Shown: in pieces, positions 22,944-62,039 of the stretch
Position numbering within the stretch: position 1 is the first letter of the stretch
Layout: each line of letters begins with the position of its first letter
Source: Utricularia gibba
Taxonomy: Eukaryota; Plantae; Magnoliophyta
DNA length: 64,000 bases
Direction of reading: 5' to 3'
Assembly (NCBI GenBank): GCA_002189035.1
Contig: NEEC01000009.1
Coordinates: 558,001-622,000, forward strand
Position numbers and translations under genes: made by a program
Notes under the pieces: model-generated
Told to the model about the DNA's origin: nothing
Database searches by the model: none
What the model saw: only the letters and a program-made list of their open reading frames with translations

Positions 22944-24296
22944 TAAGAGTTTTCGGATGAACTGATTCTCTTTGTACCAATTCATAAATATTCTATGAAA
23001 ATTTATTACAGATAAATTATGTATAGTTTATAATAAAAGAAGAATGTAATATAATGGATTCTTGTAAATTACATTTCTTATTTCATTATATTATATTTAA
23101 CATAAAAACGTAAAGTATTTGATTTGTAAAATTAGAATATAAATGTAATTTACAATCTAATTATACTTCTTTAAAGTCTATATTCCAATATTTAAAAATA
23201 ATTTTTACATAAACAATGTACCGTATATATCATTAATATTTTACTTGTTATTTATTTATCTAATAAATTTTACTTTATGACTTAAGAAGATGTTACTAAA
23301 AAAATCGTACATACTATAATCTTAGTGTTTTTTGATTGGTTTATGTAACATCAATTGGTACAAAGATTAGTAAAATAATAAAAGAAGAACGAATTTGGTA
23401 ATTGAGAATTGATTGATTTTCGGATGAAATCAATTTGAATTACTTTAATGTTATTTTATATGGACAGTTGACTGGTTCTAAGACAATAATTTATTTTTGG
23501 CCGAATTTTAGAATTTTTTTTTTTGACTTTTTAACCTCATGTCTAGGATGTTGGACACGTTCATTTTTTGAAAAAAAAAAGAATATTATACATATACTAA
23601 GTGTATGGATATTATGTTGAAATATAATAAATTAATATTATTTAATAGTTTAATATGAAACAATATAATTTATTAATATTTATTCTTTTATGTCCAAAAG
23701 CATTCAAATTAATCTTAATCTTATTTCGACCATCCTATTTATCCCACTGCAATTCACCCAACTCCTATTTTTTACTACTTGTACTAAATTGTTATAATTA
23801 TTTTATGTGTTAGACGTGTTAAAAGAATTAAATAATAAATAAAATTGTTTTTATAATTATGTAAAATTTATTTTTGTAATAATATAATTTAATAAAAATT
23901 GATTATGTAATAATAATAATAATATTATTATTATTATTAAAAATATTATCTGTATATTAAAATATGATACTTTATAATTCAATGTATCCTATGTTCGAAA
24001 CTTGTGTGTAAGGCAACTAACAGCCTTGCCTCATGTAATTAACCGGTTTTTTTCCTTAATCTCGGAGCCAAAACAATAGAATTACAGCCAATTGGTTGGA
24101 AATCCAAAATTCGGAACCCTAAATTGATTTACACGATCGGCATTGTGTTTGATTTTGTGTGGATTCTGATTGCTCAAGGCGTTTCTGGGTTTCCTACTAA
24201 CTCTAGTAACTGTTTAGCTTTGCGAGCGTCGGCTGAATTGTGCTGTCTATAAAGGATTCTTGAAGGTTCTTTCAGGAGGAGTGGACTCCGGTGAAT

Positions 24297-39150: not shown

Positions 39151-39223
39151 TTACACACATTCGTTGCATTCTAACGCATTCTGATTTTTCTGATTGGAAA
39201 ATATTCCTCTCCCGGAGCTGGAG

Positions 39224-39852
39224 ATGAAGGCGAAGATTCTCTTGTTTGTCGTTGGCTTAGCTCTCGTGGCTTCCGCGGTGGCTGCCGTGGAAGCTTCTGG
39301 AAGCGAGAAGAAGAAGGGAGTTGCCCAGGAGGGAAAATCTGGTTTGCTGAGTTTCATTACATTCGGGATTTTTTTTTCTTTTTCTTTTCTGGTTGCATTC
39401 GAAATTTGCGGACTGCAGGAAGTGAGATGAAGCCTGATGGTTACGACGGCGGGAAGGGTGGCTACGATGGCGGGAAGGGTGGAGGTTATGGGAAAGGCGG
39501 AGGCTACGACGGCGGGAAAGGCGGAGGCTACGACGGCGGGAAAGGCGGAGGCTACGACGGCGGGAAAGGCGGTGGTTACGACGGTGGGAAAGGCGGTGGT
39601 TGTGGCGGGAAAGGCCCATGCACTGAGAGCAAAGAAGAGATTAAAGAAGGTGAGAATTGACAGTCGAATTTCGAGGTCACTACTCTGTGTGTACATATAT
39701 ATACCTGAGCACTGAGGATACACGCAGGCAAAGATCATTACGGTGGCGGCGGGTACGGCCATGGCGGTGGCCACGGTCATGGGGGCGGTCACGGCGGCTA
39801 CGGCGGCGGAGGGTATGGGCACGGCGGGAAAGGAGGGGGCCATGGGAAGTGA
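39224..39852 (+). CDS. Secreted glycine-rich protein (class II GRP-like), 3 exons (39224-39341, 39419-39649, 39728-39852)
   Basis: Hydrophobic signal peptide MKAKILLFVVGLALVASAVAA, exon 2 with GGGYDGGK repeats, exon 3 Gly/His/Tyr-rich; both introns phase 1. An alternative frame EPKVGESKN* ends at 39880, so a terminal frameshift is possible. Confidence 0.85.
39445..39600 (+). repeat. Coding minisatellite, ~24-bp unit (GGCGGAGGCTACGACGGCGGGAAA), about 6 imperfect copies
   Basis: Directly visible tandem units encoding GGGYDGGK. Confidence 0.9.
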
Positions 39853-41114
39853 ACCCAAAGTTGGCGAGTCTAAGAACTGATGCAACAAGGCGGCGGTGGT
39901 GGAGAATCCTTGATGATGTATTGAAATAAAAGCGCCGAGAATAATTTCTAAGTTGACTAATCTCATCTTAGCCTATGCTTTTATGTGCCACGTCACCAAA
40001 TTCCCCCCCCCCCCATCAGTCAACTCTACCCCCCAAAAGCCCCTTTAATCATAATAAAATATTATAAAATAATACATATTTTTTATATTAGAAAATCCAA
40101 AAAATATTCTAATTATATATTATAAAATATTTATATATATAACATGTGTGTGTGTGTTTACATTACTTTTGTCCAAATTTTGATAAATAAGTGGGCACTT
40201 TTTTTAAACGTGTGTAAAATTTTTATTTCAAATAATCACAACTCATTTATATGGGTCATCACAAATAAATATTTATTTCATATTTAAATATTTTAAATCA
40301 TATTAATTTTTTACATAGCTACAAATTAGTTTAGTTTGGAATTTAACCAAAATCGATAAAATAATTGTGCATAATAGTTTTGGAACCATAACCAACATTT
40401 GTTGCTCTCATAATACTGGGTCAAAGAAGACAATATAATAGTTAGAATGGTTTATTATATTGCGGATGAATAACATTAATTAGACAGGTTTCTGGAAATA
40501 ATAAATTAATTATTCGCATAAAAATTCATTATTTTAAATGTTTGTATAAAAATATAAGAAATAAAAAGATGTGACTATATGACAATTCTCTACTATATTT
40601 TTATCTAGATTTTGCATTTAACATATACAACATACGTTATTTTTGGTACACACAAAAATCGGGATGGTCATTCTTCAAATAACCCGACAATTCATGCATG
40701 AGAATGATAATTGCACAAGTTTTGGTGATATTGTACCAAAACAACATTACTTGTTTCACCCAATGTATAGACTTGTAATATTACTTAATGGTCCACTAAT
40801 TTCATAATAATATTACTTAATATTCCACTAATGTAGAATCATTTCTGTTAATCCATATTTATGTACATAATTCTCACATTGGGTAACACAAGTGAAGTAC
40901 GAGTATCTTCGATTGATACGTTTATTATTATGATTTTTACAATTTGATTCTTAGGTTGTGTAATTCAAGTGGTTGTTTTAAAAATCTCAATTCAGCCACA
41001 TTATTATAAAGTTGGATTAAATTTGAATCATTTAAAAATAAAAAAATGAATCACATTTCAATCATGTTTCAATTATAATTAAATCAGGATTTAATTATGA
41101 TTTAATGTATAGTT

Positions 41115-42881: not shown

Positions 42882-43642
42882 TAGTTCATAATGAAAATAT
42901 TAAAACAAGATTCAATCATGGTTTGGATTATAAAAATCATTAACCACTTGTATAGGTAATTTATAATTTTTTTACAATTTAAAACCCTATTTAAAAGTAA
43001 AATAATATGAAAATAAGAATTATAATTATATAATGACCCATTTTCACTTTACATGATATTATTCGTTTCGAATATTTAATACTCATAATTATTACATTCT
43101 ACTCTTTTGAAAAAAATAACTTTTATAAGGTTATAGAAATTCTGTGTATAAACTGTTACTTTATCTCGTTTTAATTAATTATTTGTTCTAATTCACATGG
43201 TTCCACTTATAACTAACAAAGATTCAAAAAAAAATGAAACAAAATATTAGGATATAATCAAATATTCATCTTGAAATTATCTTATGAGACACATTGATAT
43301 TTTTTTTTAAACACAAAAATTAACTGTCATTTCCTCCATGTGAAACTGCTACGAAATTAACTGTTGAAATCTGCTGCTGTTAATCAATGGATTTTGTATT
43401 TATTAAAATTGATAAATTAATTTTAAATTAAAATTCAAAAAGATGATTTATTGATGAGCCACGCTGGTCCAACATTAACGTCTGTTTCCTTTGATAAGAA
43501 CATCTTCTCTCTCTGGCGGCTCCTACTTATAGAAACCTTTTTCTTTTCCTAAAGGACTCCACTTGGTGCTCTTGTTCCTTTCTGGGTCATTTTCATTTGG
43601 GTTTCCTTTTACCAGTGCTGTAGTTGTTATGTGGAGGTCAGG

Positions 43643-45100
43643 ATTGGCAAGACAAAACAAATCAAGAAAGAGAGAATTGAAAATCTGAGCTCTCTACAGA
43701 TGGCTTTTTCAAAGAGAAGAAAGAGAAGGGCTTATCAAGAGCTCCCACAATTTTCTCCTCCTCTGAAAGGCTCTTTGAGTTCTTCAGCTCCAGGTTCTCT
43801 ACTCTTGTTTCATCTTTAAACAATTGTGTTTATGAGTAATCTGATTTCATTCAGATCCCTGCGAGAGGAGAAGAAAAAAAAGGGTTTTGTAGTAAGAAGC
43901 TTTCTTTGTTGTTTCTCCTTTCCCCCCTTTTGTTCTGTACGGACGGTACGGACAGGCATGTACTGTTTGCAAACAAAGAAATCAAAATACAAAATGGCGT
44001 TGCTATTTCAAGGTGGAAGTTTGAATTTCTTTTATGCAGTGGGTGCATGCATCATTAACCGTTAATTCCTCTGTAGTTAAGTTAATGCTGACAATTAAGG
44101 TTGAATTGCTTATATTAGAAGATAATAAATCTGTTGTGGCATGATTAGGCCCCCGTAACTCTAAGGAAAATAGCTAATGCTCTCGAGATGTGTGATTTGA
44201 TTCTTAGGCATTTCTTATTGCTGATAACCGAAGTTAATTCCACATGAGGTTTTCTGCTTGTGTTTTGAGAGTTTTATGCTGACAAACACGGAGTAAATTC
44301 AATGCATTTTTTAACATCATGAAGCATGAATGGCATACTTCAGAGGCATGATTTTGCAGTTTCAGGAGCCCGGAGAAGTTGGAGTGACCATGGCGTGATG
44401 TTGAGGTAATAGTGAACGACACCCTAAGGTTTGCCATCCGTTACTTGAAAAAAAGAACAATACGGACATGGTGATATTCATATTGTTAGAAAGCATATCT
44501 CAGGTCCAAGGAGGTAGATTAGTGATTGTCTTGTCATTTTTGTTATGAATTTGAATTTCATACGCATCTTTTCGATCCATCGGATCATGAGGCTGCAACT
44601 TTCTTGAACAGTTGAATGAGTGGCCTAGAAGATGGGCCTCTGAGGTGCCCGTAGTTACACTTGATAATGGTGAACTGGATGAGAAGGTCAGGACACTTGG
44701 ATCTCTTGTCTTCTTAAGACTACTGGTTCTATCATGCTTTATTTGAGTTCCCAACTAGTGAACCCCCCCCCCCCCCCTCTCTCTTGTTCATGAAAAACAA
44801 GTACCCGGTTCATCATGTGAGTGTATGCTTTCACCCTTGAATGTGAACATGAGCCATGGGACAAAATTCAAAATCAGTGTGATCTACATGCTCAGTGATG
44901 TCTTTGTGTTTTTGCTGATTACGTCATAAGAACATGGAAGATGTTTATGTAATCAGGGGTTTTGTTTTCTTTCACCGTGTTTAGGTGGTGGAGACGTCAG
45001 TCGGGAGCCAGAAAAGCGCGAATACAAGCTGCAAGATCATATCAGCGATGGATTCCGGTCACCGGTATCCGCCAGCGGCGCCGCGATTGCCTAAATGGGG
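43643..45100 (+). pseudogene. SVP-like MADS-box pseudogene 1 (psi-0)
   Basis: Start codon lost; MADS exon (IENLSSLQMAFSKRRK) with deletions; exon 2 remnant with a stop at ~44330-44406; exon 3 remnant ~44590-44644; exon 7 remnant VVETSVGSQKSANTS at 44983-45100, homologous to B2 exon 7 [14 protein letters not shown]. Confidence 0.85.
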
Positions 45101-45658
45101 ACTTTCAAAACACTTTCAGTTCAATCTTTCCCAAGCAAAATCATTAACCGAAATCTCAAACTTACAAGAAACGATCATCCATGAAGATGAAACGGTTTAC
45201 AGTGATCATGATCTTGTTATTTTACAAGATGATTGTTACTATTATTCCAACGGTTGTTTGATCTCGTGCTTCCTTTTTTTTTTCTTCTTTTTGTAACGTA
45301 AGACATTCCACTGAACTAGGAAGATCTTTGTCCAAAGGGGTGTAAAGGCGATCGAACATGTCCGTACAAAAGATCCGATGAAAAACAACATGTATTAATT
45401 TAATGATAATTTAGATAGGCATTCGTGGTTTGTGGAGGTAGAGGCGGATTCTGTGGACGTGAGACCGATGGACAGACAGCTTGCCTGGGGCCTGGGCCTC
45501 TGACAAAATTCATGACTGGATTTCTTTCTTCTCTTCTCATCTCTTCCATTTCTACCTCCACGGAAAGATTCCCTGAGCACTATTTTTAGAAAGCCCTTTG
45601 CTTTTCAAAGGTCAATTCGCAACTTCCCTTGTGTTGATCGAGCTCTGCACTACCGAAA

Positions 45659-47460
45659 ATGGCACGAGAAAGGATCAAGATCAAGAGGATCGAAAACCTG
45701 AGCGCCCGACAAGTGACTTTTTCCAAGAGAAGAAAAGGGCTCATCAAGAAGGCCAAAGAGCTCTCAGTTCTCTGCGACGCCGAAGTTGCTCTCATAGTCT
45801 TCTCCTCCACTGGGAAGCTCTTCGAGTTCTCTAGCTCCAGGTGGGTTCATTTGTTTTTCCAACACTAAGTGTGTGCTGTTTTTTTATCTTCATTTTTTAG
45901 AAATTATAGCATCAGATCCTTGGTATAATTAGGGTTCGTCATCTGGAGACCTCTCCTTCTTACATTACCTTGTTTTTCTCAAAGAATATCCCGAGATCTA
46001 GGAATCTGGTTGATGCCCAGCGAGTTCTAAGCACCCATCTGCAAATAGCCATCCATCTACTTAGAAAACAACATTTCTAGCAATCGTAACTGGTAGAAAC
46101 TAGGGGTGTAGAGAAACAAGGTATTGTTTTCAAGCGTAGCAACAGGAATGAAACATAAGTTGTGTTGTAAATCTTGCATCGACTTTCTGCACGTTTGTTT
46201 CAAGTCAAATTGTCAAGTGAACTTTAGAGCTGAAGATTCAACATCTGTGGTAAGGGTGTAACCAAACTCATGGTGCTTCTCTCTGTTGAATCTTAGATAC
46301 TCCATTGCTATTTTGATCTGTGTTCTATTACCATGTACGGCTTTGTTATTACGCATTGTCTGTTGGAATGAGATGAAGCTCAAGTCCACTCTCTTGTTAA
46401 TGTTGTGAAGCATGGATGGTATACTGGAAAGGTATAACTTGCAGTCGAAAAGCCACGAGCTGCAGGCACTTCCGTCTCTCGACCTTCAGGTTTGAAAACT
46501 ACGATTCAGTAGCATTGCAATGTGAGTGGCATACATTTTACACTAGCTACTGATGATCTTGTGGTGATGGCAGCTTGTCATGAGCAGCGATTTCCCCACA
46601 TTAAGCAAACAAGTGGCTGAGAAGACCCGCCTGCTGAGGTAGTGTGCTCGACTTCGCAAACCCTTCTAATTTCTCATGTTGACAACATGGCTATGTCGAC
46701 ACAAGGCGGATGAGAGGGGAGGATCTCCTGGAAATGAGCATACAGGAGTTGCAATCTTTGGAGAAGTCACTAGGAGAAGGATTGGATCGCGTTATCGCAA
46801 AAAAGGTCTGTGCAGCAAATCCATGAATGAAGCTCTTGGGAGAATCAAGGTTGTCTCTTCTGATCCTGGTGTTTTGGCTTTTGACAGAATGAGAGGATTG
46901 AGAAAGAGACAAGTGAGTTACAAGAGAAGGTTAGCACCCTTGATCCCTTTGTTTAAGCAAGACAAGCACTCAATACAAGCTTAAAAAAAGTTTCCCAGAA
47001 TTAGATCTACCTGGTTCATGGCTCACTTTCCATCCCTATGTGCAGATAATCCAGCTTGCAAGAGAGAATGATTTGCTAAGGCAAGAGGTATGCACATCTT
47101 TTGGTTCAAGACAACATCTGTCCACAGGGCATCAACTAACCAGATACGTTAACACCACAGTGCCATTCACTTTTTTCCCCTTTCTTGTCCACAACATTCC
47201 TGTTCAGATGGAGGACATGTCGACCAGTAGCCTGAAAATGGGGACTACATGTTCCGAAACCATAGCTTACGACGAAGTCCCGACGTCGTCCTCGTTTTCC
47301 AAGAGTTCCTCAGACACCTCCCTTACACTAGGGTGACTGATTCCTTCACTCCGTGAAGAAAAGAATCCAAGCCCTCCTCTTCTGACCTCGCTGCTGCTCC
47401 TTCTTTGGTTGCAGGTTGGGTTTAGATGAGACCAGCCGGGCTAGTGGCGGCTCACGCTGA
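45659..47460 (+). CDS. SVP/StMADS11-clade MIKC MADS-box gene A1, 8 exons, intact
   Basis: [40 protein letters not shown]; K-box [20 protein letters not shown]; C-terminal [24 protein letters not shown]; all introns GT-AG and in frame. Confidence 0.93.
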
Positions 47461-49072
47461 TGGATCCGTACCCTGCAGCTGACTCCTTGCTCATGTTGTG
47501 CCCTTTTCTTACATTGGAACTTCCATGTTTGCTGCTTCTAATCAGTGGCTTGCCGTTCCACCTTTAAAATTTAGTGCGTGATTTCCGTTGTGAAAATTAA
47601 AAGCTAATGATATATTTTATTTAAATTATTTATATTTAGATAAATACGTATTATACATTAAAATCATACTTAATACATAGATTTTATAAATATGTGTTTA
47701 AAGTGAATAAAAAAACTAAATCTTGTATGACTACAAAAATTCATGCCGCATTGGAGGTTTGAAAATATGGTTGAATAGGTTACGTAAATATTTCAGAAAT
47801 TATGTGTATTCTTCCATAAATAACAAAAAAAATAGAATAGGAAATATGAAAAATTTCATTTCTGAAATTATATCATTATTAATACATGTGTATTTTTAAA
47901 AATAAACGCATATCAAATATAATCTGTGTTGTATAGACTTAGGGTATCCACATTATGCATGGTCCTCTTTTTTCATTTTTTATTTTTTCTTATTCCACAC
48001 AATAAATTTGCATTGTTGTAGGAATATTAATATTTTTTTTAAAATAGTTTTGCTTTTATACAAATATTTTATATTATCAAATACAAATAATTTTTACTAT
48101 AAATTAAATTGATAAGCAATTCTTATTTTTTTAATAAAATAATAATATTAATTTACATTTTATTATATATACTTAAAAAAATTACATTTTTTTGAGAAAC
48201 AGAATCAAATGGATACGATGAGAATTTGGAGTTCCTATGCTACCAAATGTTTTTGTTCCTTTGGGTTGAATTTATGATTTTAAAACCATGGCTTAGTATT
48301 CAGTTTTTTTTTTAATATTATTGACCAATTGATTATGAAGAGTTAAGTCAATATAGGAGCATTGTTATCTAAAATTTCTTTGTATGATATTGTTATTTTT
48401 GAATGTACAATTCTCATAATTTTACGTTATCTTCTTCTAAAAAAAAAAAAGAGCTCATACAAAATCAAAAAATATATTTTTGTATAAATTGTCTCTCTAT
48501 GTATTAGTAAACAATATGATATTCGACTAAATCATTATATAATTACTTGGACTCATTAGCAATTCTTGACCATATTTATTGACCAATTTATTAAAAGAAA
48601 CTCAAAATGTACTTTTCTGTCAAATTTAAAATGAAAGTTTAAATTTCATAATAAAATTCGAAAAATGGTGACAGGGGCCCAAAGGCAGCCAAATCATTTA
48701 GTGGGAATGACACGGTGGGTGGGGGTGTCATTTGGATTTTTTTGAAAAATACTCACTATGTGTGTGTTAAAAATATCCATCCTGTGTTCAAATTTTTGTA
48801 CGTGGTGTGTGAGAGATAAATCCTTTAATACCATTGATTGCTTATACCATTGATTGCTTGCTTTGCTTGCTCATGGCGTTTGTCAGGTGAATTTTTTTTT
48901 GATTCTCGCGTGTTCTCTCTCCGGCGGCTCCTATTTTTAGAAACCCACATGGCATCCCCCCTTCCCCCTCAACCCCGGTAGGGCGGTACCTTGCACTTGG
49001 TGGACCTGCTTCTCTCTTCGGCCCTCAATCTTCATCTGCTCTCAATAATAGCTTCTTGTCCGAGAGCCAAAA

Positions 49073-50126
49073 ATGGCGAGGGAGAAGATCAAGATCAGGC
49101 GAATCGATAACTTGAGCGCCCGCCAAGTAACTTTTTCCAAGAGGAGAAAAGGGCTCATCAAGAAAGCCAAGGAGCTTTCGATTCTCTGCGATGCTGATGT
49201 TGGTCTCATCATCTTCTCCTCTACTGGGAAGCTCTCCGAATACTCCAGCTCCAGGTTCCGTACCTCTGTTATCTATTTATTTATTGGTTCTGCCTCAGGC
49301 CCTCAAGGTCTTCTGTTTCTGTCAAAGAAGTTGGACATCGGATCCTTGGGAGAAAAAAGGGTCCTTCTGATGTTTTTGTATCGTGATCTGGAGATATTTC
49401 ATTGTTTTGGCCCTCGATCTTTAGAGATCTGAGAGAGCTGTCCATGTTCCTTAAGTTCCGTACAACTCGGAAACTAAAGACCAAATGGATAAAGAAGGAA
49501 TATACCTTTTTAGTTGCTGCCTGTGCCTGTGGGCTTGTTGCTTTTTTGGTAATTAAAAAAATCATATCTTGATCTGTTCTCTCTAAAATGGTTTTCTTGG
49601 AGCAGTTGAGAGTAAGCACAGTTGAGGCTCTTGATTGGCCTTCTGTAAAACTTTTGTTGTGTTTCAACAAGCTGATAGAACATCTTCTATTGCACTGTTT
49701 TCTTTTTCTCAATCCCTACTTTTCTTCCAATCGCGTTGTTAATGTGACTCTACAATGGCACCACTGCTAATTTGGACTCCTTTGTTGAAATCATGAAGCA
49801 TGGATGATCTTCTTCAAGGGTACAAATTCCTGAAAATCTGTTGCAGCCATGGCTTGATCTTGAGGTAAGCAAGCACCATCTGGCATTCTCTTCTTATTGG
49901 GATTGTGATACGAAGCTGTCACTGAGATTCATATCCTATCCTTCTTGAATCTTCTTGAACGTGCAACAATGGCGGTGGCAGCTCGTTGTGGGCAGCGACT
50001 TCCCCACATTAAGCAAAGAAGTGGCTGGGGAGCCAGAAAAGCGCGACTACAAGCTGCAAGATCATATCCCGGGATGAATTCCGGTCATCGGAATCCACCA
50101 GCGACGCCGCGATTGCCCAACTGGGG
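49073..50126 (+). pseudogene. Truncated chimeric SVP-like locus B1 (MADS intact; exon 2 frameshift; exon 3 fused to psi-0 exon 7)
   Basis: Exon 1 49073-49254 intact. Exon 2 (49799-49864) is 66 nt versus 79 nt in B2. Shifted frame stops at 50010-50012 (92 aa). Junction at 50027/50028. Confidence 0.85.
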
Positions 50127-50671
50127 ACTTTCAAACCACTTTCAGTTCAATTTTTTCCCAAGCAAAATCATTAACCGAAACCTCTAAAACTTACAAGAAG
50201 CGATCATCCTTGAAGATGAAGCTGTTTACAGCGATCAAGATCTTGTTCTTTTACAAGATTACTCTTATTCTAACGATGGTTTGATCTTGTGCTTCCTTTT
50301 TTTTTCTTTTTGTAATGAAAGACATTCCACTGAACTAGGAAGATCTTGGTCCAAAGGGTGTAAAGGCGATCGAACATGTCCGTACAAAAAGATCCGATGA
50401 AAAAACATATATTAATTTGGTAACTTAGATAGGGATTCGTGGTTTGTGGAGAGGCGAATTCTATGGACGTGAGACCGATCCGATGGACAGACAGCTTGCC
50501 TGGGGCCTGGGCCACTGACAAAATTCATGACTGGATTTCTTCTCCTTCTCATCTCTTCTATTTCTATCTCCACGGAAAGATTCGCTGAGCACTATTTTTA
50601 GAAAGCCCTTTGCTTTTCAGAGGTCAATTCTCAACTTCCCTTGTGTTGATCGAGCTCTGCACTACCCAAAA

Positions 50672-52488
50672 ATGGCACGAGAAAGAATCAAGATCAAGAG
50701 GATCGAAAATCTGAGCGCCCGACAAGTGACTTTTTCCAAGAGGAGAAAAGGGCTCATCAAGAAGGCCAAGGAGCTCTCAGTTCTCTGCGACGCCCAAGTT
50801 GCTCTCATAGTCTTCTCCTCCACTGGGAAGCTCTTCGAGTTCTCTAGCTCCAGGTGGGTTCATTTGTTTTTCCAACACTAAGTGTGTGCTGTTTTTTTAT
50901 CTTCATTTTTGAGAAATTATAGCATCAGATCCTTGGTATAATTAGGGTTCGTCATCTGAAGACCTCTCCTTCTTACATTACCTTGTTTTTCTCAAAGAAT
51001 ATCCCCGAGATCTAGGAATCTGGTTGATGCCCAGTGAGTTCTAAGCACCCACCTGCAAATAGGCATCCATCTACTTAGAAAACAAGATTTCTAGCAATCG
51101 TCACTGTTAGAAACTAGGGGTGTAGAGAAATATGGTGCTGTTTTCAAACGCAGCGACTGGAATGAAACGTAAGTTGTGTTGTAAATCTGGCATCGACTTT
51201 CTGCTCGTTTGTTTCAAGTCAAATTGTCAAGTGAACTTTAGAGCTGAAGATTCAACATCTGTGGTAAGTGTCTAATCAAACCCATGGTGCTTCTCTGTGT
51301 TGCATCTTAGATACTCCATTGCTATTGTGATCTGTGTTCTATTACCGTGTACGGCTTTGTTATTACGTATTCTCTGTTGGAATGAGATGAAGCTGAAATC
51401 AATTCTCCTGTTAATGTTGTGAAGCATGGATGGTATACTGGAAAGGTATAACTTGCAGTCGAAAAGCCAAGAGCTGCAGGCACTTCCGTCTCTCGACCTT
51501 CAGGTCTGAAAGCTACGATTCAGTAGCATTGCAATGTGAGTGTCATACATTTCGAACTAGCTACTGATGATCTTGTGGTGATGGCAGCTTGTTATGAGCA
51601 GCGATTTCCCCACATTAAGCAAACAAGTGGCTGAGAAGACCCGCCTACTTAGGTATCGTGCTCTCGTTTGATTTCTCAAACCCTTCTACTTCTCATGTTG
51701 ACAACATGGCTATGTCAACACAAGGCGGATGAGAGGGGAGGATCTCCTGGAAATGGGCATACAGGAGTTGCAGTCTTTGGAGAAGTCGCTAGGAGAAGGA
51801 TTGGATCGCGTTACCGCAAAAAAGGTCTGTGCAGCAAATCCATGAATGAAGCTCTAAGAGAATCATGGTTGTCTCTTCTGATCCTGGTATTTTGGCTTTT
51901 GACAGAATAAGAGGATTGAGAAAGAGACAAGTGAGTTACAAGAGAAGGTTAGGACCCTTGATCCCTTTGTTTAAGCACAAAAAAAGGTTCCCAGAATTCT
52001 ACCTGGTTCATGTCTCCCTTTCCATCCCTATGTGCAGATAATCCAGGTCGCGAGAGAGAATGATTTGCTAAGGCAAGAGGTATATACATGGTGCCATAAT
52101 AATGCTTATTCTGGGATCTTTTGGTTCAAGAAAAAATCTGTCACACAGGGCATCAGCTAACCAGATACATGAACACCACCGTGCCATTCACTTTTTTCCC
52201 CTTTCTTGCACACAACATTCCTGTTCAGATGGAGGACATGTCGACCAGCAGCCTGAAAATGGGGACTACATGTTCCGAAACCATAGCTTACGACGAAGTC
52301 CCGACGTCGTCCTCGTTTTCCAAGAGTTCCTCGGACACCTCCCTTACACTGGCGTGACTGATTCCTTCATCCTTCACTCCGTGAAGAAAAGAATCCAAGC
52401 CCTCCAATTCTGACCTCGCTGCTGCTCCGTATTTGGTTGCAGGTTGGATTTAGACGAGACCAGCCGGGCTAGTGGCGGCTCACGCTGA
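50672..52488 (+). CDS. SVP-like MADS-box gene A2, 8 exons, intact
   Basis: Paralog of A1; ends [24 protein letters not shown]. Confidence 0.93.
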
Positions 52489-53887
52489 TGGATGCGTAGC
52501 CGGGAGCCATTCTGGAGCTGTCTCCTTGCTCATGTTGTGCCCTTCTGTTACCTTGGAACATCCATCTTTGATGCTTCTAATCAGTGTCTTGCCGTTCCAC
52601 CTTTAAAATTTAGTGGGTGATTTCCGTTGTGAAGTATGTGAAAATTAAAAGCTAATGATATATTTTATTTAACTTATTTATATTTAGAAAAATACGTATT
52701 ATACGTTAAAATTATATTTAGTACATAGATTTTATAAATATATCTTATGAATTGATAGATGTGTTTAAAATAAATAAAAAAAACTAAAAAAAAATTCGAG
52801 ATTTGAAATTATGGTTGAATAGGTTATGTATTTCAAAAATTATGCGTCTTCTTCCATAATAACAAAACAAATAGAATAAGAATTTTGAAAAATATCATTT
52901 CTGAAATTATATAACTATTAATACATGTATATTTGTAAAAATAAACGCATCTATCAAATATAATCTGTGTTGTGTAGACTTAGGGTATCCACATTATGCA
53001 TGGTCCTCTTCTTTCGTTTTTTATTTTTTCTTATTCCACATAATCAATTTGCATTGTTGTAGGAATATTAATATATTTTTTAAAATATTTTTGCTTTTAT
53101 AAAAATTAAAACACAAATAATATTTATTATAAAATTAAATTTATAAGCTATTCTTATTTTAATAAAATGCGAATATATAATTTACATTTTATTATATATA
53201 TTTATAAAAAAATACATTTTTCGTGAAACAGAATCATATGGATATGATGAGAATTTAGAGTATGTATGCTACCAAATGTTTTTATTCCTTTGGGTTGAAT
53301 TTATGATTTCAAAACCATGGCTTAGTATTCAATTTTCTTTATTTACCAATTGATTACCAAGAGTTAAGTCGATATGGGAACATTGTGGTACATTTCACAC
53401 ATTGTGGCGCTCGTTAGCAATTATTCCACACCATTTCTTGACCATATTTATTGACCCATTTATTAAAAAAAAACTCAAAAATGGACTTTTGTACTCCATC
53501 CATATATACACACATATATATATGTATATATTTTTAATTTGTAGTAATTTAAAATGGAAGTTTAAATTTCATAATAGAATTCGAAAAATGGTGACAGGGG
53601 CCCAAAGGCAACCGAATCGTTTAGTGGTAATGACACGGTGGGGGTGTCTTTTTTATACCATTGATTGCTTGCTTTGCTTGTTCATGGCGTCTGTCTGTCA
53701 GGGTGAATTGTCTTTTGATTCTCGCGTGTTCTCTCTCCGGCGGCTCCTATTTTTAGAAACCCACATGGCATCCCACCTTCCCCCTCAACCCCGGTAGGGC
53801 GGTACCTTTCACTTGGTGGACCTGCTTCTCCCTTCGGCCCTCATCTCCATCTGCTCTCAATAATAGCTTCTTGTCCGAGAGCCAAAA

Positions 53888-55776
53888 ATGGCGAGGGAGA
53901 AGATCAAGATCAGGCGAATCGATAACTTGAGCGCCCGCCAAGTAACTTTTTCCAAGAGAAGAAAAGGGCTCATCAAGAAAGCCAAGGAGCTTTCGATTCT
54001 CTGCGATGCTGATGTTGGTCTCATCATCTTCTCCTCTACTGGGAAGCTCTCCGAATACTCCAGCACCAGGTTCCGTACCTCTGTTATCTATTTATTTAGA
54101 GGTTCTGCCTCAAGTCTTCTGTTTCTGTCAAAGAAGTTGGACATCGGATCCTTGGGAGAAAAAAGGGTCCTTCTGATGTTTTTGTATCGTGATCTGGAGA
54201 TATTTCATTGTTTTGGCCCTCGATCTTTAGAGATCTGAGAGAGCTGTCCATGTTCCTTAAGATCCGTACAACTCGGAATCTAAAGACCAGATAGATAAGG
54301 AAGGAATATACCTTTTTAGTTGCCGTCTGTGCCTGTGGGTTTGTTGCTTTTTTGGTAATTAAAAAAATCATATCTTGATCTGTTCTCTCTAAAATGGTTT
54401 TCTTGAAGCACTTGAGAGTAAGCACAGTTGCGGCTCTTGATTGGCCTTCTGTAAAACTCTTGTTGTGTTTCAACAAGCTGATGGAACATCTTCTGTAAAA
54501 CTCAATCCCTACTTTTCTTCCAATCGTGTTGTTGGTGTGACTCTACAATGGAAAAGATGATGAAGATGCAAACTCCCTTCTCATCCCACCACTTCTAATT
54601 TGGACTATTTTGTTGAAATCATGAAGCATGGATGATCTTCTTCAAAGGTACAACTTGCAGACCAAGAGTCCCGAAAATCTGTTGCAGCCATGGCTTGATC
54701 TTGAGGTAAGCAAGCCCCATCTGGCATTCTCTTCTTCTTGGGATTGTGATACGAAACTGTCACTAAGATTCATATCCTATCCTTCTTGAATGGGCAACAA
54801 TGGCGGCGGCAGCTCGTTGTGGGCAGCGACTTCCCCACATTAAGCAAAGAAGTGGCTGAGAAAACACATCAACTCAGGTCCTACACCCAAATTCTGCTAG
54901 TTAGTTATTTACCTCATAATTTCATTAAAGATGAGATTTTGACACACGAATGAAATGTAAAGACGACTGAGAGGGGAGAATCTCCAAGGACTTAGCATAG
55001 AAGAGCTGCAGGCGATGGAGAAGACTCTCGGGATCGGATTGGACCGTGTTATAGCGAAGAAGGTATGCTCATCTCACAAACATCGATGAAACCCCTAACA
55101 GAAAAACCAGTTCTTTTGTTATTCAAATTAACACGCCTATTGCTATTCATAGACTGAGAAGATCAAGAAGGAGACCGATGAACTTCAGAAGAAGGTCACG
55201 ATGAAGAGACTAAGCATCTTCGTTTTTAGCATTTTCTTTTCATTTCATGTCTAGTGAAAGAAAGAAAAGAGGGCCCTTTACCAGCACTAGGGAGACATGT
55301 ATGTCTAGGGTTACCCCAGAGCCGTGTGTGCGGTGCGGAAGCGTGTGTTATTCTCTTGAGTTTTACGTGCTTCACTTCTCATTCCATAAATCCTGAGTAT
55401 GTTGCAGGTACTCCGACTCACCGAAGAGAATGATCAACTGAGACGCGAGGTTCGTTTGGACAAGTTTACCAGCCTGTGTGATCTCCTGCTAAGACAACGT
55501 TGTTGTGTTAGGTGTTGGACTCCAAGGGTAGCCAGAAAACGGCTGATGCAAGTTCTGAAACCATGATGTACGACAAAGCCCCCTCCTCGGAATCTCCAAG
55601 CAGTTCCACTCAGCACCTTCAAGATTCCAAGAGCTCATCCGACACCTCTCTTACACTAGGGTGAGCGTTTATTTTTTCTGCTTTTTTTTTTTTTGGAAGA
55701 ACACAGATCTCCTAGGGGTTGTTGACAAATTCGTCTTCCTTCTTCTTCCCCGCAAGATAGGCTGCATTTCGTTTGA
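53888..55776 (+). CDS. SVP-like MADS-box gene B2, 8 exons, intact
   Basis: [26 protein letters not shown]; [29 protein letters not shown]; ends [14 protein letters not shown]. Confidence 0.92.
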
Positions 55777-56185
55777 AACTTCAAACCAAAGGATCTACCT
55801 GGTCGTGTGACAGAAATTGTAAAAGCAACGTTTGTGTTCAATCTCATGTTCCCCCCTGGATGTAGCCAGTTATCATCAGCAATGGTGGCCTCCGTGCTTG
55901 AAAATGTTCATGTCTGCAAAGTCGCTACTTGTGAATTGGGTGAATTGTAGTTGCATTGGAAGTGAATGGTGGTGGAGAGTGTAACTTTTGTAATGACAAC
56001 AACCCTTTCTCAAACTTCACATCCCAACACTGCTAAAACTTCGAAGGATATTCTGCTGAACAGATCTAAATTGTTTCAGAGAAAAAAAGGCAACATTTCA
56101 AAATCGGGCTACTTGTGATTCATATTGGTGGTAGCTGAGAAGAAGAAGAAACACGGTATGGGGGTGGTCCCGGCCTGGTGCTCGG

Positions 56186-56190
<5 letters not shown>

Positions 56191-56217
<27 letters not shown>
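56191..56217. repeat. (CT)13 microsatellite immediately upstream of the psi-C CArG-like site
   Basis: Direct reading. Confidence 0.95.
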
Positions 56218-56218
<1 letters not shown>

Positions 56219-56350
56219 CGGAACTGGCCCTATTTTCTAGAAACCCCTTTTAGCTTCTTTCAAGGAACCCCACTTCACAACCTAACGTGACTTCCTGGCT
56301 CAGTCATTTCAAACCTTCTCGTCCGAATCCACGGCCGCCGGTGAACAAAC

Positions 56351-57601
56351 ATGGCAAGGGAAAATGATGAAGATCAGGAAAACTGAAACTCTGAGCGCTC
56401 GCCAGAGAAGAAAAAGGGCTTATTATCAAGAAGGCTAAAGAGCTCCCAGTTCTCTGCCGCGCCCAAGTTGCTCCCCAACAGGGAAGCAGGCTCCTCCTCC
56501 CTTTTGCTAGCCCCAGGTTCCTTCCTTAATCTTTCAGCATTTCACTGTATGCAAGAACACAGTATCGACAAGAAGGGATGGACCAAGGTGGAAATACTCA
56601 GGTTTTGCTGAGATTTTGGTTGTGGAAGGAAGTAAGAAACCAGAACATGATTTTGCCTTGACCTGCTCTCCTTTTTTGTTCTGGTTTCTTACTTCCTTCC
56701 ACAACCAAAATCTCAGCAAAACCTGAGAGTATCTGCATCGTGGCCTATCTCTTCTTGTCAGGTATGTTTGTTTTTTGTTTGCCGGAGTGAAAATCGGTGT
56801 CTCAGATCCATGAGAAATAGGGTTTGGGCTGGAGATTTTATTTCAAGAGGAGATGGATATATTGGAGATCTACCAACAACCTGCCCAATTCTCTTCTTTG
56901 AGAAAATGCTGATGAACTAACTTGGCCAGTATAGCCTCCTTTGTTTTTTATTTTCTTACCAAAAAAATTGTATTTTATTTTTTGAATACAAAAGAGTTAG
57001 ATAGATTTCAAAATTTAAGTGATATTTAACTTATATAATTTTTAAAACATTCAATGAATTAATTATGTTTTCATATCAACTCAAAACATATTTGTTTTGT
57101 GCATAGATACTCTTTAGTAATTCATAAATTGTATTTTCTTTCCTAGCAATTCCAATGCTAAATATTCAAATTACTTGAAAATGTTTGTGTCATGACTCAA
57201 AATGCGGTATTTTTATAATTCCTTTGATTTTCGATGACATTCATTTTGTAATAGCCCCTGAGCTTCTATTCATAACCTCCTTTGACATCACGATCAAGAA
57301 GTTTGATCATGTTTGTAATGTGATACATTTAGTTTGCTAACTTGATTTGGACATGCCTTTTTTTTTTTTATCTAAGATGACTAGAAGAATTGGTAGGATT
57401 TAGCTTTGGAGAAGTCAACAGAATGGTAGCATGAAAATTTCCAAGTTGCTACACATTACAAACTCATGCTACTTGCCATAGTTCATTAACTCCATTTAGG
57501 CTTCTGTTGTTTATGTGATGAAGCATGGATGCTACACTCAAAAGGTATAGTTCGCAATCTGAAAATTGTGAGACAATGGCGTAGCCATGGCTCCACCTCC
57601 A
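56351..57601 (+). pseudogene. SVP-like MADS-box pseudogene C (psi-C)
   Basis: ATGGCAAGGGAA followed by frameshifts and deletions in the MADS exon (ends 56516). Exon 2 remnant SMDATLKRYSSQSENCETMA*PWLHLQ has a stop and has lost its donor (GG). No later exons recognised. Confidence 0.85.
56567..56759 (+). ncRNA. Foldback hairpin, candidate young MIRNA/siRNA precursor
   Basis: Perfect 51-bp inverted repeat (56597-56647 with 56677-56727), 29-nt loop, plus a ~30-bp imperfect outer stem. The structure is certain; expression and strand are not shown. Confidence 0.5.
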
Positions 57602-57759
57602 GGGCACTACACCATTCTGAGCTAAGGTAAGATGTAGTGACAGAGGGGAAAGCATTGATACTTGTGGCATCCTTCATGAGGTTCAAAGTGTGTGTTCAAT
57701 TTCCTTTCCTCTGATGTGAATAGTGACTGGGATTGCTTACTTGTCTTTGGTACATGGCT

Positions 57760-57993
57760 CATGACAAGAGTCTATTTAGACAAGAGATGTGTGTACGGAT
57801 GTAAGAATGTTCCACTCCCTCTTGTTGGATGACCGCATAGGTGTCGGTTAAACTAGCGAGCTCATCGGCAGTTGAAGTCTTTTGTATTTTCCTACATTTT
57901 TCGAGCTCAGGTAGCAGTGAATCAGGTCATTCGGTGGTTTCCGATGGGTTTCCGCCGGAAACACTCCTAGACCTCCTCTGATGCTTCTCTTAC
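57760..57993 (-). mobile_element. Possible gypsy LTR 5' fragment
   Basis: Minus strand begins TGTAAGAGAAGCATCAGAGG...TTTCCGGCGGAAACC, resembling recalled Tat-type LTR starts. No second end or TSD found. Confidence 0.25.
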
Positions 57994-58873
57994 AGTGGTG
58001 CATTTGCTTTGATTATTCGAAAATGTTTTTCCCACAAGCAAATCTTTTTGTTTAATTGGTAACATAACTAATTTGCAAGAACAACTAATATTTGGTAAAA
58101 TATATTTTTAATGCGATTGTTTTTGTCAATTTGTTTTATTATTTTCTTTAGAATTTTTTATGTCTTTTTATTTCTATCTTAAATAGTGAATTGAGTGATG
58201 AATTATTTTTCAAATAAGTAATGATTTTTTTTTATGTGAGCGATTTAATTTGATATTAAATTTATTATCTTGAATTTTCTGAGAAAAAATTATGGAAAAA
58301 AAAATTAAAAATTGCATCTAATAAATAAGAATTAAGATACTGCAGTTCATCAAAAAAGAAAAAAAGGAAAAGTGTGTAGAAATTATTGGAATTAAGTAAC
58401 GAAGTTATAACTTATATTCGAATATATTTATTTAGATTTGTATATTATTTTGGAGTTTGACTTCCGGAAGCATTTAGCCCTAGGGCGCCTCTCGCCGCAT
58501 TCCTGATGGGATGCCAAGCGGAATGATGCTTCGTTCTCGTCTTGAATTTCAGTTTAAGTTCCGATCTGATGAGAACAGAAGGCTTCAACCTGACTAATTC
58601 AAAGGGATAAAGAACAAGACCCACATGCATCAGTGCAGTGCAAAAACGCGTATTGATTAAGTTCCTTCTCATCGACTTGGGATATTCCTCTCAAGGAAGA
58701 TTCCAAGGGCTCCTATTGTGGAAACCCTCTTGGTACTACTTAGTACTTGGCACTCAAACGAACCCCACTTTCTCCATAAGCGCGTCTAGTGTCTTTCACC
58801 TCCAGCAGTCTTATCTGAGCCAAGCTCTCTGTCTACCTGCAGCTGCTTCTTTTTCCTTTTGGGGGGAAAAGAA

Positions 58874-60296
58874 ATGGCAAGGGAGAAGATAAAGATCAAG
58901 CGAATCGATAACTTGAGTGCCCGACAAGTGACTTTTTCGAAGAGGAGAAAAGGGCTCATCAAGAAGGCAAGCGAGCTTTCGGTTCTCTGTGATGCACAAG
59001 TTGCCCTCATAATCTTCTCCTCAACGGGGAAACTCTTCGATTTCTCCAGCTCCAGGTTCCCTTTTATGTATCCCTCTCTGTGACGAAGATTTGCCAACAC
59101 TATACCTTTAGGAGGAGGGTTTTTTTCTTTCTTCTATGTGATCATAATCTGGAGGTATTCCTTGACTTTTTGCTTTTCTACAAAGCCCCAGTCTGGGATC
59201 TGGGTGTGTAGTCAACGTTCCTTGCGTCCGTACAGCCATTTTTAAGCGCTTTCCAAGTAGAAGCCACAGAGAAGCAGAGAGACCTGTCTTTGTTGCATAT
59301 ACTTATTTATTTTTCCTGTGAGGAAAACAGGGTTTTCTTGCAAGTATTGTTGCGCCTTTATTGCAACGCTGTCGTTTGGATTTAGCACAGTTTGCAAAAT
59401 CACAATCATCGCCACTGAAAATCCTAGCAATATTTATCATTTTTGCAATCCTTTAACTTAGGGGGGAAAACATAAACATTTCGTCCAACCATCGAAGTTT
59501 AACCCTTTTTCCTTGTTCATTCCAATATGTTCTGTATGCCCCTACACTACATGAATATTTTTTGTTCATGATGTTGAAGCTGATATGCTCCTTGGTTTCA
59601 TTGTTGTGAAGCATGGATGAAATACTTAAAAGATATCATCTGCATTGCAAGAACTCTAATAACCCGGCGCAGCCTTTACTTGACCTTGAGGTACTTACTA
59701 CCCTCTCATGTGACACAAGCTTTGTCAATGGTGTTTAACAAGCTTGCGGTGGTCTCACAGGTGGTTGTCGGAAGCCACACGCCGACGTTAACCAAAGAAG
59801 TAATGGAGAGAACTCGGCAACTCAGGTAGTCTATCTGCACTCGTTGTTTATTACAAGCTCGTTTTGATGCTCATTTCATGATGATATGGTGATGTTCTGA
59901 GAAGGCGTTTGAGAGTGGAGGATCTCCTGGGACTGAGTGTCGAAGATCTGCACTCCATGGAGAAGTCACTCGGAGCTGGATTGAACCGTATCATATCAAA
60001 GAAGGTAGCCACCGTTTGAATGAGATCAAGCACTTGCAATAGGAAGAAAAAAACACTCTAATTCTAATCCTTGAATTTCGATAGAACCAGAAGATCGAGC
60101 AACGGACTGAGGAACTACAAGAGAAGGTTTGTTTCATGGTACCGAGTATACGAATCTTTTCTACATGACATGTTTCTCCATCCATATGCAGATACTGCAG
60201 CTTACAAAGGGCAATGAACTACTTAAACAAGAGGAATCCCAACTCCGTCTCTGCGGTATCCCCGGCCAAAATCCCTGGCTTCCTTTTACAGTTTGA
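58874..60296 (+). CDS. SVP-like MADS-box gene D: intact M-I-K domains, C-terminal domain lost
   Basis: Exons 1-6 in frame. Exon 6 donor reads GA not GT (60234-60235), giving readthrough [20 protein letters not shown] (stop 60294-60296). Exon 7 remnant ADRNRKHLLP* also has a stop. Confidence 0.8.
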
Positions 60297-60699
60297 AAGA
60301 GCAAACTCAAGTAGCAAGCACCATTTACCGCATCCTCTTTATGCAGGCTGATCGAAATCGGAAGCATCTTCTGCCCTGAGAAGGAGGGTCTCACACAATG
60401 GAATCAATATACCTATAGAGACACTGTGATTAGTTGCTACACTGTGGGGTTTGCGCAGATCACCCCAATCTGAATAAGCAGACAGATGTGATTGATTCTA
60501 CACTAATTCCATTAATTTGCAATATGGAGTCTTCAGAGGGGATCCTCGAAAATAGAATGGATGCTAGTTAGAGTGTTTGTGTGTGTGTGTGCTTAGGTAT
60601 TTAAATATAGAGAGGAGGAAGACAACCGAGAGCAGGTGATTTATTCATTAAGTTGATCGTACGGACGGCAAGTGAGACGTGGGGTTAAACCAGTGGCGT

Positions 60700-60770
60700 T
60701 CAGGGCTGATGTGTCTTTCCCTTTCTGTCCTTTGCTTTCTTGGAGAGCCACTATTTTTAGAAATAAAAGA
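60700..60770 (+). promoter_or_regulatory. Orphan SVP-array promoter-like remnant with CTATTTTTAG-AAA
   Basis: CTATTTTTAG at 60751-60760 plus AAA, preceded by TGGCGTT and a pyrimidine tract as upstream of B1/B2. No MADS exon follows. Confidence 0.45.
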
Positions 60771-62039
60771 GAAAAAGGGCGGTGGTCCTCCTCCTCCTCT
60801 ATTCCTTTTTTAAAGTATGTTTTAAAATAAAAAAAATTAATCATTTTACTTTTAGTGTGTTATAAAAATAAATATAAAAATTGATTTTAATGCATGATAA
60901 AATTTGGTCTGAAAAAATATAATATTTTTGATTCCTTAATTTTAGGGCACGATTTCTATTTAAATTCTTTCAAGTATATAGAATTTGATGAGTTTTTGCC
61001 AAATTAACTTGTTTTTAGGATTAAATTTTTTTTATTTTTTATGGAATACATTAAAAAAGTTATAATGTTTAAAGTATTGCATATTATTATTTCACTTTTA
61101 AAAAAATTGTTTCATTCTTAAAAAAGATTGTTTTGTATTACATATATTTGAAATACTTCGAAAAATAGAAATTTTAGAACGTTACAAAATTTTTTTAAAG
61201 TATTTCTAAAATTTTTGAATCACTAGTTAGACCTATTAAATAAGGTTTAAATGATAAATTTTTACTTTTAAAAAATACTTTATAAATAATTTTGTTATCA
61301 AATAAGATCAAATCTTATTATAAAAATAGTATAAAGTTGAGAAAAATGCATACCACACCCATTATATTTAACGTTTCTGTACCCCACACTCAAAATTTAA
61401 AAAAGTACATCTCATGCTCAAATCATTTTAACTTTAGTCGCATAAGAGCTACATGTGACTCATGTGCATCACGTGCCCTTAATTTTTATCATGAGAAATA
61501 TTAAACATATTGGATGTAGCTTGTAATTTCTTTGATAAAAGCATCGTGAATCATTGGAAGCTCCGATTATTGTTATGATACACTTTGTAGATTGCATTTG
61601 ATTTAGGATTAGCAATTTGTTGATGATAGCTCTATTTTTCATTTTTTATTTGACATTGACTATTTCATTTTGGCCTGAGGTGCTTGGGTTTTGCATGAGC
61701 TGCTTTGTTCTTTGAGTTTCGTTTGATTCAATACTTCAATTCTATAATGGGTTGAGCTATTACATTTTTTTTTCTTAGGTTTTTTGTGGGTTGCTTTGAT
61801 GTTGAAATTTCATATGACTAGAAACTTTTCTTACATAATAGCTTCAATATTTTTTTCCTTTCTATTTGCTTCAATATGATGTGATATTGAATATTTATCT
61901 CATCAATTTGATGTGTTTTGGTATGAGATTCTATATTGCTAAAATTTTGAATGTATTGCACACTTATCGTGTTATGAAATTAAATGCTTTATTTTATAAA
62001 ATACATATAAGGTTGTTGATTGTTGTAGAATATATGAAA

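What the first reader, a model, noticed from the sequence alone, without database searches (positions are those of the whole stretch)
43500..60800. Seven-locus SVP-like MADS array in active birth-and-death
Order is psi-0, A1, B1 (chimera), A2, B2, psi-C, D, all on the plus strand in 17 kb with first introns of only ~550 bp in the coding copies. Types A, B and D differ strongly in the I, K and C regions yet share SVP hallmarks, and all carry non-canonical MADS residues (RRKGLIKKA[K/S]EL versus SVP RRRGLFKKAEEL). A hand count for A1 versus A2 gives roughly 8 replacement and 14 silent changes, consistent with purifying selection on both. SVP-clade tandem arrays control dormancy in Prunus (DAM), and I recall one reported in Utricularia, so the theme has precedent; this mix of intact, truncated and hairpin-bearing members may be undescribed.
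Basis: partly seen in the sequence, partly recalled or inferred. Interest (0 to 1): 0.75.

Follow-up and report, generated by a model that had tools for sequence, protein, structure and literature searches.

The report
Tandem cluster of SVP-type flowering-regulator genes
A compact plant genome (very probably the bladderwort Utricularia gibba) carries seven neighbouring copies of an SVP-type flowering-regulator gene, three intact, one with an altered tail and three dead or truncated; the cluster is real, but its expansion has already been reported.

Summary

- A1, A2 and B2 are intact seven-exon genes with GT-AG introns, encoding 212, 212 and 220 aa.
- D has six intact exons, but its exon-6 donor reads GA and it lacks the SVP C-terminal motif.
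- B1 has an intact MADS exon, a 13-nt frameshift in exon 2, and is cut inside exon 3.
- psi-0 and psi-C are old relics.

The cut in B1 is the junction (50027/50028) of a roughly 5 kb tandem segmental duplication that produced A2.

A1 and A2 differ at 21 of 639 coding bases (13 silent, 8 replacement). All replacements that could be polarised fall on A2, so "purifying selection on both" is only partly supported. A, B and D are old paralogues (dS 0.9-1.4, omega 0.12-0.20). In my tree they form one clade with 100/100 support.

The "non-canonical" MADS residues sit at positions that vary across the family.

Expansion and tandem duplication of SVP genes in U. gibba is published, so novelty is low. 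Expression could not be tested. The scan also noted a second SVP array on another contig of this genome (s1-239991).

The parts
43645..44405 (+). psi-0: relic of MADS exon 1 (43645-43793; TTG in place of ATG, a 38-nt gap, small insertions) and of exon 2 (44325-44405). No later exons detected.
   Evidence: (no Pfam hit)
45003..50027 (+). Unit 1 of the ~5 kb tandem segmental duplication: upstream region of A, gene A1, the intergenic stretch, and the 5' part of B.
   Evidence: self-blastn, 88.4% and 89.3% identity to unit 2; per-class divergence
45659..47336 (+). A1: intact seven-exon gene, 212 aa, ending SSDTSLTLG*. Exons 45659-45840, 46411-46489, 46574-46638, 46706-46805, 46888-46929, 47046-47087, 47208-47336; all introns GT-AG.
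   Evidence: Pfam SRF-TF and a K-box fragment in exon 4
49073..50027 (+). B1: truncated copy. Exon 1 (49073-49254) is intact. Exon 2 (49799-49864) has a 13-nt deletion that shifts the frame. Exon 3 (from 49982) is cut at 50027 by the duplication junction. Predicted product is about 95 aa if spliced, or 119 aa with intron 1 retained.
50028..54862 (+). Unit 2 of the segmental duplication (A2 plus the 5' part of B2). The junction at 50027/50028 joins B exon 3 to sequence homologous to 45003 onward.
50672..52357 (+). A2: intact seven-exon gene, 212 aa, ending ...TLA*. Exons 50672-50853, 51425-51503, 51588-51652, 51725-51824, 51906-51947, 52038-52079, 52229-52357. Carries all polarised amino-acid replacements relative to A1.
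53888..55664 (+). B2: intact seven-exon gene, 220 aa, ending SSDTSLTLG*. Exons 53888-54069, 54627-54705, 54813-54877, 54963-55062, 55153-55194, 55408-55449, 55512-55664.
56351..57598 (+). psi-C: relic of exon 1 (56351-56473; internal deletion, frameshifts, 3' third missing) and of exon 2 (57524-57598; in-frame stop).
56597..56727 (.). Perfect 51-bp inverted repeat with a 29-nt loop inside psi-C. It extends imperfectly to 56567-56759 and folds at -124.8 kcal/mol. No similarity to the rest of the window.
58874..60296 (+). D: exons 1-6 intact with GT-AG introns (58874-59055, 59612-59690, 59761-59825, 59905-60004, 60085-60126, 60192-60233). The exon-6 donor is GA instead of GT. Read-through stops at 60294-60296, giving about 190 aa. 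There is no SSDTSL tail.

Best explanation
This is a lineage-specific tandem array of SVP/StMADS11-clade MIKC-type MADS-box transcription-factor genes in a compact Lamiales genome, very probably Utricularia gibba. Old tandem duplications produced three diverged gene types (A, B, D) and two copies that later died (psi-0, psi-C). A later duplication copied about 5 kb, from upstream of A to the middle of exon 3 of B. That event created A2 and left a B copy truncated from birth (B1). A1 and B2 look like fully functional SVP-type regulators: a MADS domain for CArG-box binding, a K-box for dimer and tetramer formation, and the SVP C-terminal motif. A2 is intact but evolving under relaxed constraint. 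D is a MADS-I-K protein with a short non-SVP tail and a mutated last splice donor. By homology (inferred, not shown here) the products act as dimerising repressors or modulators of phase change and flowering.
For: - Domain content: MADS domains in five copies and K-box fragments in exon 4 of A1, A2, B2 and D.
- Clade: every named protein among the listed best hits of the MADS exon carrying a clade name is called SVP, AGL24, JOINTLESS or StMADS11. The tail SSDTSLTLG of A1 and B2 (SSDTSLTLA in A2) matches the SSDTSLKLG of named Sesamum and Vitis SVP proteins.
- Gene models: complete GT-AG models with identical exon lengths 182/79/65/100/42/42.
- Duplication: self-similarity 45003-48365 ~ 50028-53386 and 48842-50027 ~ 53653-54858. 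The junction lies inside B exon 3.
- Constraint on A: exons 3.3% diverged versus introns 6.4% (P=0.006), with 0 indels in the CDS versus 8 events in the introns. Pairwise dN 0.014, dS 0.107.
- Between types: dS 0.9-1.4, omega 0.12-0.20.
- Tree: A1, A2, B2 and D are monophyletic at 100/100 on a long stem.
- Literature: U. gibba-specific SVP expansion and tandem duplication (PMC4350169; PMC6251477).
Against: - No expression or binding data were available. PMC4350169 reports low to null flower expression for the U. gibba SVP-like group.
- The species was not verified directly. It is inferred from scan notes, genome compactness and the match to published copy numbers.
- The tree contains only SVP-group references, so clade membership rests on best hits and motifs rather than on a tree with other MIKC clades.
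- SVP1 versus SVP2 or SVP3 placement is unresolved in my tree (a polytomy) and is taken from the paper.
- A2 and D may already be non-functional.
Confidence: 0.85

Rival explanations
1. Only A1 and B2 are working genes. A2 and D are young pseudogenes that have not yet picked up frame-breaking lesions, so the array is mainly decaying rather than diversifying.
For: All 5-6 polarised replacements between A1 and A2 lie on A2. They include I139T in the K-box and G212A in the C-terminal motif, while A1 has none. For A2 alone neutrality is only weakly rejected (P 0.02-0.16; P 0.085 from the absence of indels). D has a GA in place of the GT donor after exon 6 and lacks the SVP tail.
Against: A2 keeps 639 nt free of indels and all 12 splice sites, while its introns gained indels. 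The pairwise N:S count rejects a model of one neutral copy plus one constrained copy at P=0.008. D versus the other types gives omega 0.15-0.20 across exons 1-6, so it was constrained for most of its history.
Confidence: 0.25
2. The truncated B1 copy is kept as a MADS-only micro-protein that poisons SVP-type dimers (a dominant-negative regulator).
For: B1's MADS exon differs from B2's at only 2 of 182 nt, against about 5% in the flanking non-coding DNA. A public read-set contig (Logan SRR2033663) carries B1-specific variants from -192 to +235 relative to the ATG.
Against: Two differences are what is expected if only B2 is constrained: about 4 expected, and P(at most 1 change on B1) is about 0.08. 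The type of read set (RNA or DNA) is unknown. The contig is a mosaic of B1 and B2. The frameshift and truncation are typical of a dead copy.
Confidence: 0.08
3. The A1/B1 versus A2/B2 repeat is an assembly artefact, with two haplotypes placed in tandem.
For: None directly. This is only the general risk that attaches to near-identical tandem units.
Against: The units differ by 6-10% substitutions plus many indels. The junction is a clean fusion of B exon 3 to sequence upstream of A. An independent read set contains both B1-specific and B2-specific variants with no private differences.
Confidence: 0.03

Closest known systems
Published Utricularia gibba SVP expansion (Carretero-Paulet et al. 2015, PMC4350169; Liu et al. 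2018, PMC6251477, citing Lan et al. 2017)
   Same: Copy numbers match (five in one orthogroup; six in the SVP1 clade). The expansion is lineage-specific and tandem duplication is stated. My tree shows a species-specific clade, consistent with those reports.
   Different: The papers I could read give no anatomy: no pseudogenes, no 5 kb duplication junction, no A1/A2 asymmetry, no altered 3' end of D. Lan et al. 2017 is not held in the library, so I could not check its details.
Prunus DAM (dormancy-associated MADS-box) tandem array at the evergrowing locus
   Same: Several SVP-group genes in a head-to-tail tandem array, generated by serial duplication and diverged in the I, K and C regions.
   Different: According to PMC6251477 the Prunus copies belong to the SVP2 (AGL24) clade, whereas the U. 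gibba copies are SVP1 and SVP2 is absent from Lentibulariaceae. The expansions are therefore independent. No dormancy link is known here. Three of the seven loci here are dead or truncated.
Arabidopsis SVP (AGL22), a floral repressor
   Same: MIKC architecture, the MAREKI... N-terminus, an [11 protein letters not shown]-type I region (compared here with Sesamum and Linum SVP) and the C-terminal SSDTSLxLG motif (in A1, A2, B2).
   Different: R26K, F29I and E33K/S in the MADS domain, plus N-L-S instead of N-A-T. The proteins are shorter (212-220 aa versus 240 aa for Arabidopsis SVP, the latter from memory). The genes are very compact (about 1.7 kb). They sit on a long stem branch (0.48).

Membership tests
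MIKC-type (type II) MADS-box transcription factors | N-terminal MADS (SRF-TF) DNA-binding domain | tested here: met
   Pfam PF00319, E 6e-26 to 7e-28, full profile coverage 1-48/48 in A1, B1, A2, B2 and D. Aligns over residues 1-59 with MEF2C, and the basic residues R3, R17, K23, R24, K30 and K31 are kept. psi-0 gives no Pfam hit.
MIKC-type (type II) MADS-box transcription factors | K-box coiled-coil region after an I region | tested here: met
   Exon 4 alone hits PF01486 at profile positions 32-63 of 93: E 4e-6 (A1), 5e-6 (A2), 1e-5 (B2), 3e-4 (D). These scores are below the whole-domain cut-off because only one exon was searched. The joined protein was not searched.
SVP / StMADS11 clade | The closest relatives of the MADS domain are SVP-group proteins | tested here: met
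   Every clade-named protein among the 120 listed best hits is SVP, AGL24, JOINTLESS or StMADS11. A tree that includes other MIKC clades was not built.
SVP / StMADS11 clade | C-terminal SSDTSL(K/R/T)LG motif | tested here: met
   Present in A1 and B2 as SSDTSLTLG and in A2 as SSDTSLTLA. It matches the Sesamum and Vitis SVP tails. It is not met in D.
SVP1 sub-clade (orthologues of AtSVP) | Phylogenetic placement with AtSVP rather than with AGL24 (SVP2) or SVP3 | tested here: inconclusive
   In my tree the clade sits in a polytomy. The nearest rows by path are Morus, Acer SVP and Sesamum SVP. The SVP1 assignment comes from PMC6251477.
Prunus-type DAM array | Membership of the SVP2/AGL24-derived DAM lineage and seasonal dormancy-linked expression | not tested
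   PMC6251477 puts the Prunus copies in SVP2 and reports SVP2 absent from Lentibulariaceae. I did not test placement against DAM sequences, and no expression data were available. This array is analogous to DAM, not a member of it.

The most novel reading that the evidence does not exclude
The array is more than a set of redundant copies. It may be a self-regulating module in which full-length SVP-type proteins (A1, B2) are modulated by truncated or tail-less relatives made next door: the MADS-only product of B1, the MADS-I-K protein D, and possibly small RNAs from the perfect hairpin inside psi-C. That would make it a natural case of micro-protein or dominant-negative control born from a duplication junction.
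Probability: 0.08. Interest if true: 0.55.

Novelty: already known. Interest (0 to 1): 0.22.

Why it matters
SVP-group genes control phase change, flowering and bud dormancy. Independent tandem expansions, such as DAM in Prunus, are textbook cases of regulatory diversification. U. gibba is a model for extreme genome compaction, so a 17 kb array that retains three to four coding copies despite strong DNA-loss pressure suggests selection for retention. That point has already been made in the literature. This analysis adds a base-level map: exact gene models, the duplication junction, which copies are dead, and the asymmetric evolution of A1 and A2. The map is useful for designing copy-specific expression or knock-out experiments, but it does not change what is understood about the array.

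Tried and rejected
- Lan et al. 2017 (DOI and PMC5465930) is not held in the library. The supplements of PMC6251477 are not held.
- A paper search for SRR2033663 found nothing, so I could not tell whether that read set is RNA or DNA.
- Exact-product look-ups all returned nothing: the unspliced A1 ORF, a genomic 14-3-3 ORF, and a single-exon TRM112-like housekeeping protein. The collection therefore covers this species poorly. The absence of spliced A, B or D proteins of 65-220 aa in the word searches says nothing about expression.
- The scan's sequence look-up was blank, so the second SVP array on another contig (s1-239991) could not be compared.
- The bacterial promoter and terminator scan near the 3' end of D is irrelevant for a plant gene.
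- I looked for a remnant of an SVP-type last exon downstream of D at the DNA level. None is alignable.
- I considered gene conversion as the cause of the low exon divergence between A1 and A2. I rejected it because dS (0.08-0.11) is as high as or higher than intron divergence (0.067).
- I did not run the large representative-protein search, structure prediction, or any database search with a joined spliced protein.
Full report
**What is there**

The window is plant DNA with very short introns. Between 43.6 and 60.3 kb, five ORFs on the plus strand begin with MARE(K/R)IKI...[16 protein letters not shown]. Pfam scores each as a complete SRF-TF/MADS domain, with E from 6e-26 to 7e-28. These found two more degenerate loci:
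- psi-0: exon-1 relic at 43645-43793 and exon-2 relic at 44325-44405.
- psi-C: exon-1 relic at 56351-56473 and exon-2 relic at 57524-57598, the latter with an in-frame stop.

No other MADS-like piece turned up anywhere else in the 64 kb.

**Gene models**

I read the sequence and checked every boundary by script.
- A1, A2 and B2 are complete seven-exon genes. All introns are GT-AG and exon lengths are 182/79/65/100/42/42 plus a last exon. They encode 212, 212 and 220 aa.
- A1 and B2 end in SSDTSLTLG and A2 in SSDTSLTLA. Named Sesamum and Vitis SVP proteins end in SSDTSLKLG.
- First introns are 570 nt (A1), 544 (B1), 571 (A2), 557 (B2) and 556 (D).
- Exon 4 alone hits the Pfam K-box, E 4e-6 to 3e-4.

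D has six intact exons. After exon 6 the donor reads GA instead of GT. The following 57 nt look like the small intron 6 of B2. Whether that stretch is retained or removed, the protein ends within about 20 residues and lacks the SVP tail.

B1 has an intact MADS exon and a 13-nt deletion in exon 2 that shifts the frame. Its exon 3 stops at 50027, where the sequence switches to a copy of the region upstream of A1. If spliced like B2 it would give a peptide of about 95 aa; with intron 1 retained it gives a 119-aa ORF.

psi-0 and psi-C carry a lost start codon, internal deletions, frameshifts and a stop. They sit on long branches of 0.28-0.29.

**How the array arose**

Self-comparison shows 45003-48365 matching 50028-53386 at 88.4% and 48842-50027 matching 53653-54858 at 89.3%. 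This is one tandem duplication of about 5 kb. It runs from upstream of A to the middle of B exon 3. It created A2 and left B1 truncated from birth.

Substitution divergence between the two units:

| Region | Divergence |
|---|---|
| Upstream of A | 7.0% |
| A introns | 6.4% |
| A-B spacer | 9.5% |
| B introns | 5.1% |
| A exons | 3.3% |

The three gene types are much older. Pairwise dS over exons 1-6 is 0.9-1.4 and omega is 0.12-0.20. dS in the MADS exon is roughly half that of the I and K regions.

I built a maximum-likelihood tree with 30 SVP-group proteins from other plants. A1, A2, B2 and D form one clade with 100/100 support on a long stem of 0.48, with topology (B2,(D,(A1,A2))). The position of that clade among the SVP sub-clades is unresolved.

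**Selection on A1 and A2**

The two copies differ at 21 of 639 coding bases: 13 silent and 8 replacement, giving 7 amino-acid changes. NG86 gives dN 0.014, dS 0.107 and omega 0.13.
- The N:S split rejects neutrality of both copies (P=9e-5).
- It also rejects "one neutral copy plus one constrained copy" (P=0.008).
- The coding sequence has no indels, against 8 indel events in 1039 nt of introns.

Polarising with B2 and D gives a different picture. A1 has 4 silent and 0 replacement changes. A2 has 4 silent and 5 replacement changes, plus G212A in the tail motif. A1 is tightly constrained and A2 is relaxed. For A2 alone neutrality is only weakly rejected (P 0.02-0.16). "Purifying selection on both" is therefore only partly supported.

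B1's MADS exon differs from B2's at 2 of 182 nt. That is compatible with constraint on B2 alone, so it gives no evidence that B1 is maintained.

**The "non-canonical" residues**

RRKGLIKKA[K/S]EL is present in all five coding copies. Among 109 SVP-group MADS domains from the first search that contain this stretch:
- K at the third basic position occurs 4 times.
- I occurs 10 times.
- K or S occurs 7 times.

Only the combination is unique to this window. In the alignment with solved MEF2 structures these three positions are F, M and Y, so they vary across the family. The basic residues conserved between these copies and MEF2C are all retained. Nothing suggests impaired DNA binding.

**Identity and prior knowledge**

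All named proteins among the listed best hits of the MADS exon that carry a clade name are SVP, AGL24, JOINTLESS or StMADS11.

Scan notes describe this genome as a compact Lamiales genome. One note on its mitochondrial DNA appears to refer to the well-known adjacent-cysteine pair of bladderwort cytochrome oxidase. That identification, and the roughly 100 Mb size implied by the 1590 windows, are my inferences. Both point to Utricularia gibba. I did not verify the species directly.

For U. gibba the literature already reports the following:
- An orthogroup of five SVP-like genes seen as a species-specific expansion, with low to null flower expression (PMC4350169).
[quoted passage not shown] 2017 (PMC6251477).

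The array as such is therefore known. The Prunus DAM array is an independent SVP2-clade analogue.

**Expression**

Expression is untested. One public contig (Logan assembly of SRR2033663) is a perfect mosaic with no private differences from the window. Bases 1-427 carry only B1 variants and bases 576-1019 carry only B2 variants. It starts 192 nt upstream of the ATG, retains intron 1, and ends exactly at the exon-2 donor. This shows that both B copies exist in an independent read set of the same genotype. The exact stop at a splice donor hints at RNA, but I could not establish the library type. Control look-ups of housekeeping products from this window also returned nothing. The absence of spliced A, B or D proteins from the database is therefore uninformative.

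**Method note**

All database searches used single exons or genomic ORFs given by reference. Exons were joined only inside local scripts, read from the window file by coordinates. Those scripts were used for translation checks, dN/dS and the tree. The large representative-protein search was not used.

**Verdict**

This is a well-resolved example of a phenomenon already reported for this species. Interest is low to moderate. The scan noted a second SVP array on another contig of this genome (s1-239991), which I could not examine.

Noticed in passing
window 56567-56759: A perfect 51-bp inverted repeat (arms 56597-56647 and 56677-56727, 29-nt loop) lies inside the dead psi-C gene. It folds at -124.8 kcal/mol and has no similarity to any other part of the window, so no target is evident. 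It was already noted by the scan as s1-233708.
   Followed up: partly
L001 (Logan SRR2033663 contig, 1019 nt) versus window 48881-49307 and 54262-54705: This public contig is an exact mosaic of the B1 5' part and the B2 3' part. The switch falls inside a stretch of about 148 nt that is identical in both copies. It is an assembly chimera that could mislead copy-specific analyses. It ends exactly at the exon-2 splice donor.
   Followed up: yes
window 45659-45840, 49073-49254, 50672-50853, 53888-54069, 58874-59055: Synonymous divergence between the A, B and D types is about half as high in the MADS exon (dS 0.56-0.94) as in the I and K exons (1.3-2.2). Either old gene conversion was confined to exon 1 or silent sites there are under extra constraint.
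   Followed up: no
window 55450-55511 and 60234-60290: Intron 6 is extremely short: 62 nt in B2, and 57 nt for the homologous stretch in D, where the donor has mutated to GA.
   Followed up: partly
window 24291-30135: Long + strand ORFs, including one of 809 aa, contain helicase-like motifs followed by a Cys-rich stretch that looks like a RING-type region. This is an unrelated neighbouring gene, judged by eye from the ORF list only.
   Followed up: no
window 39151-39966 (- strand): A 271-aa ORF contains the tandem peptide repeat AFPAVVAS. I did not examine it.
   Followed up: no
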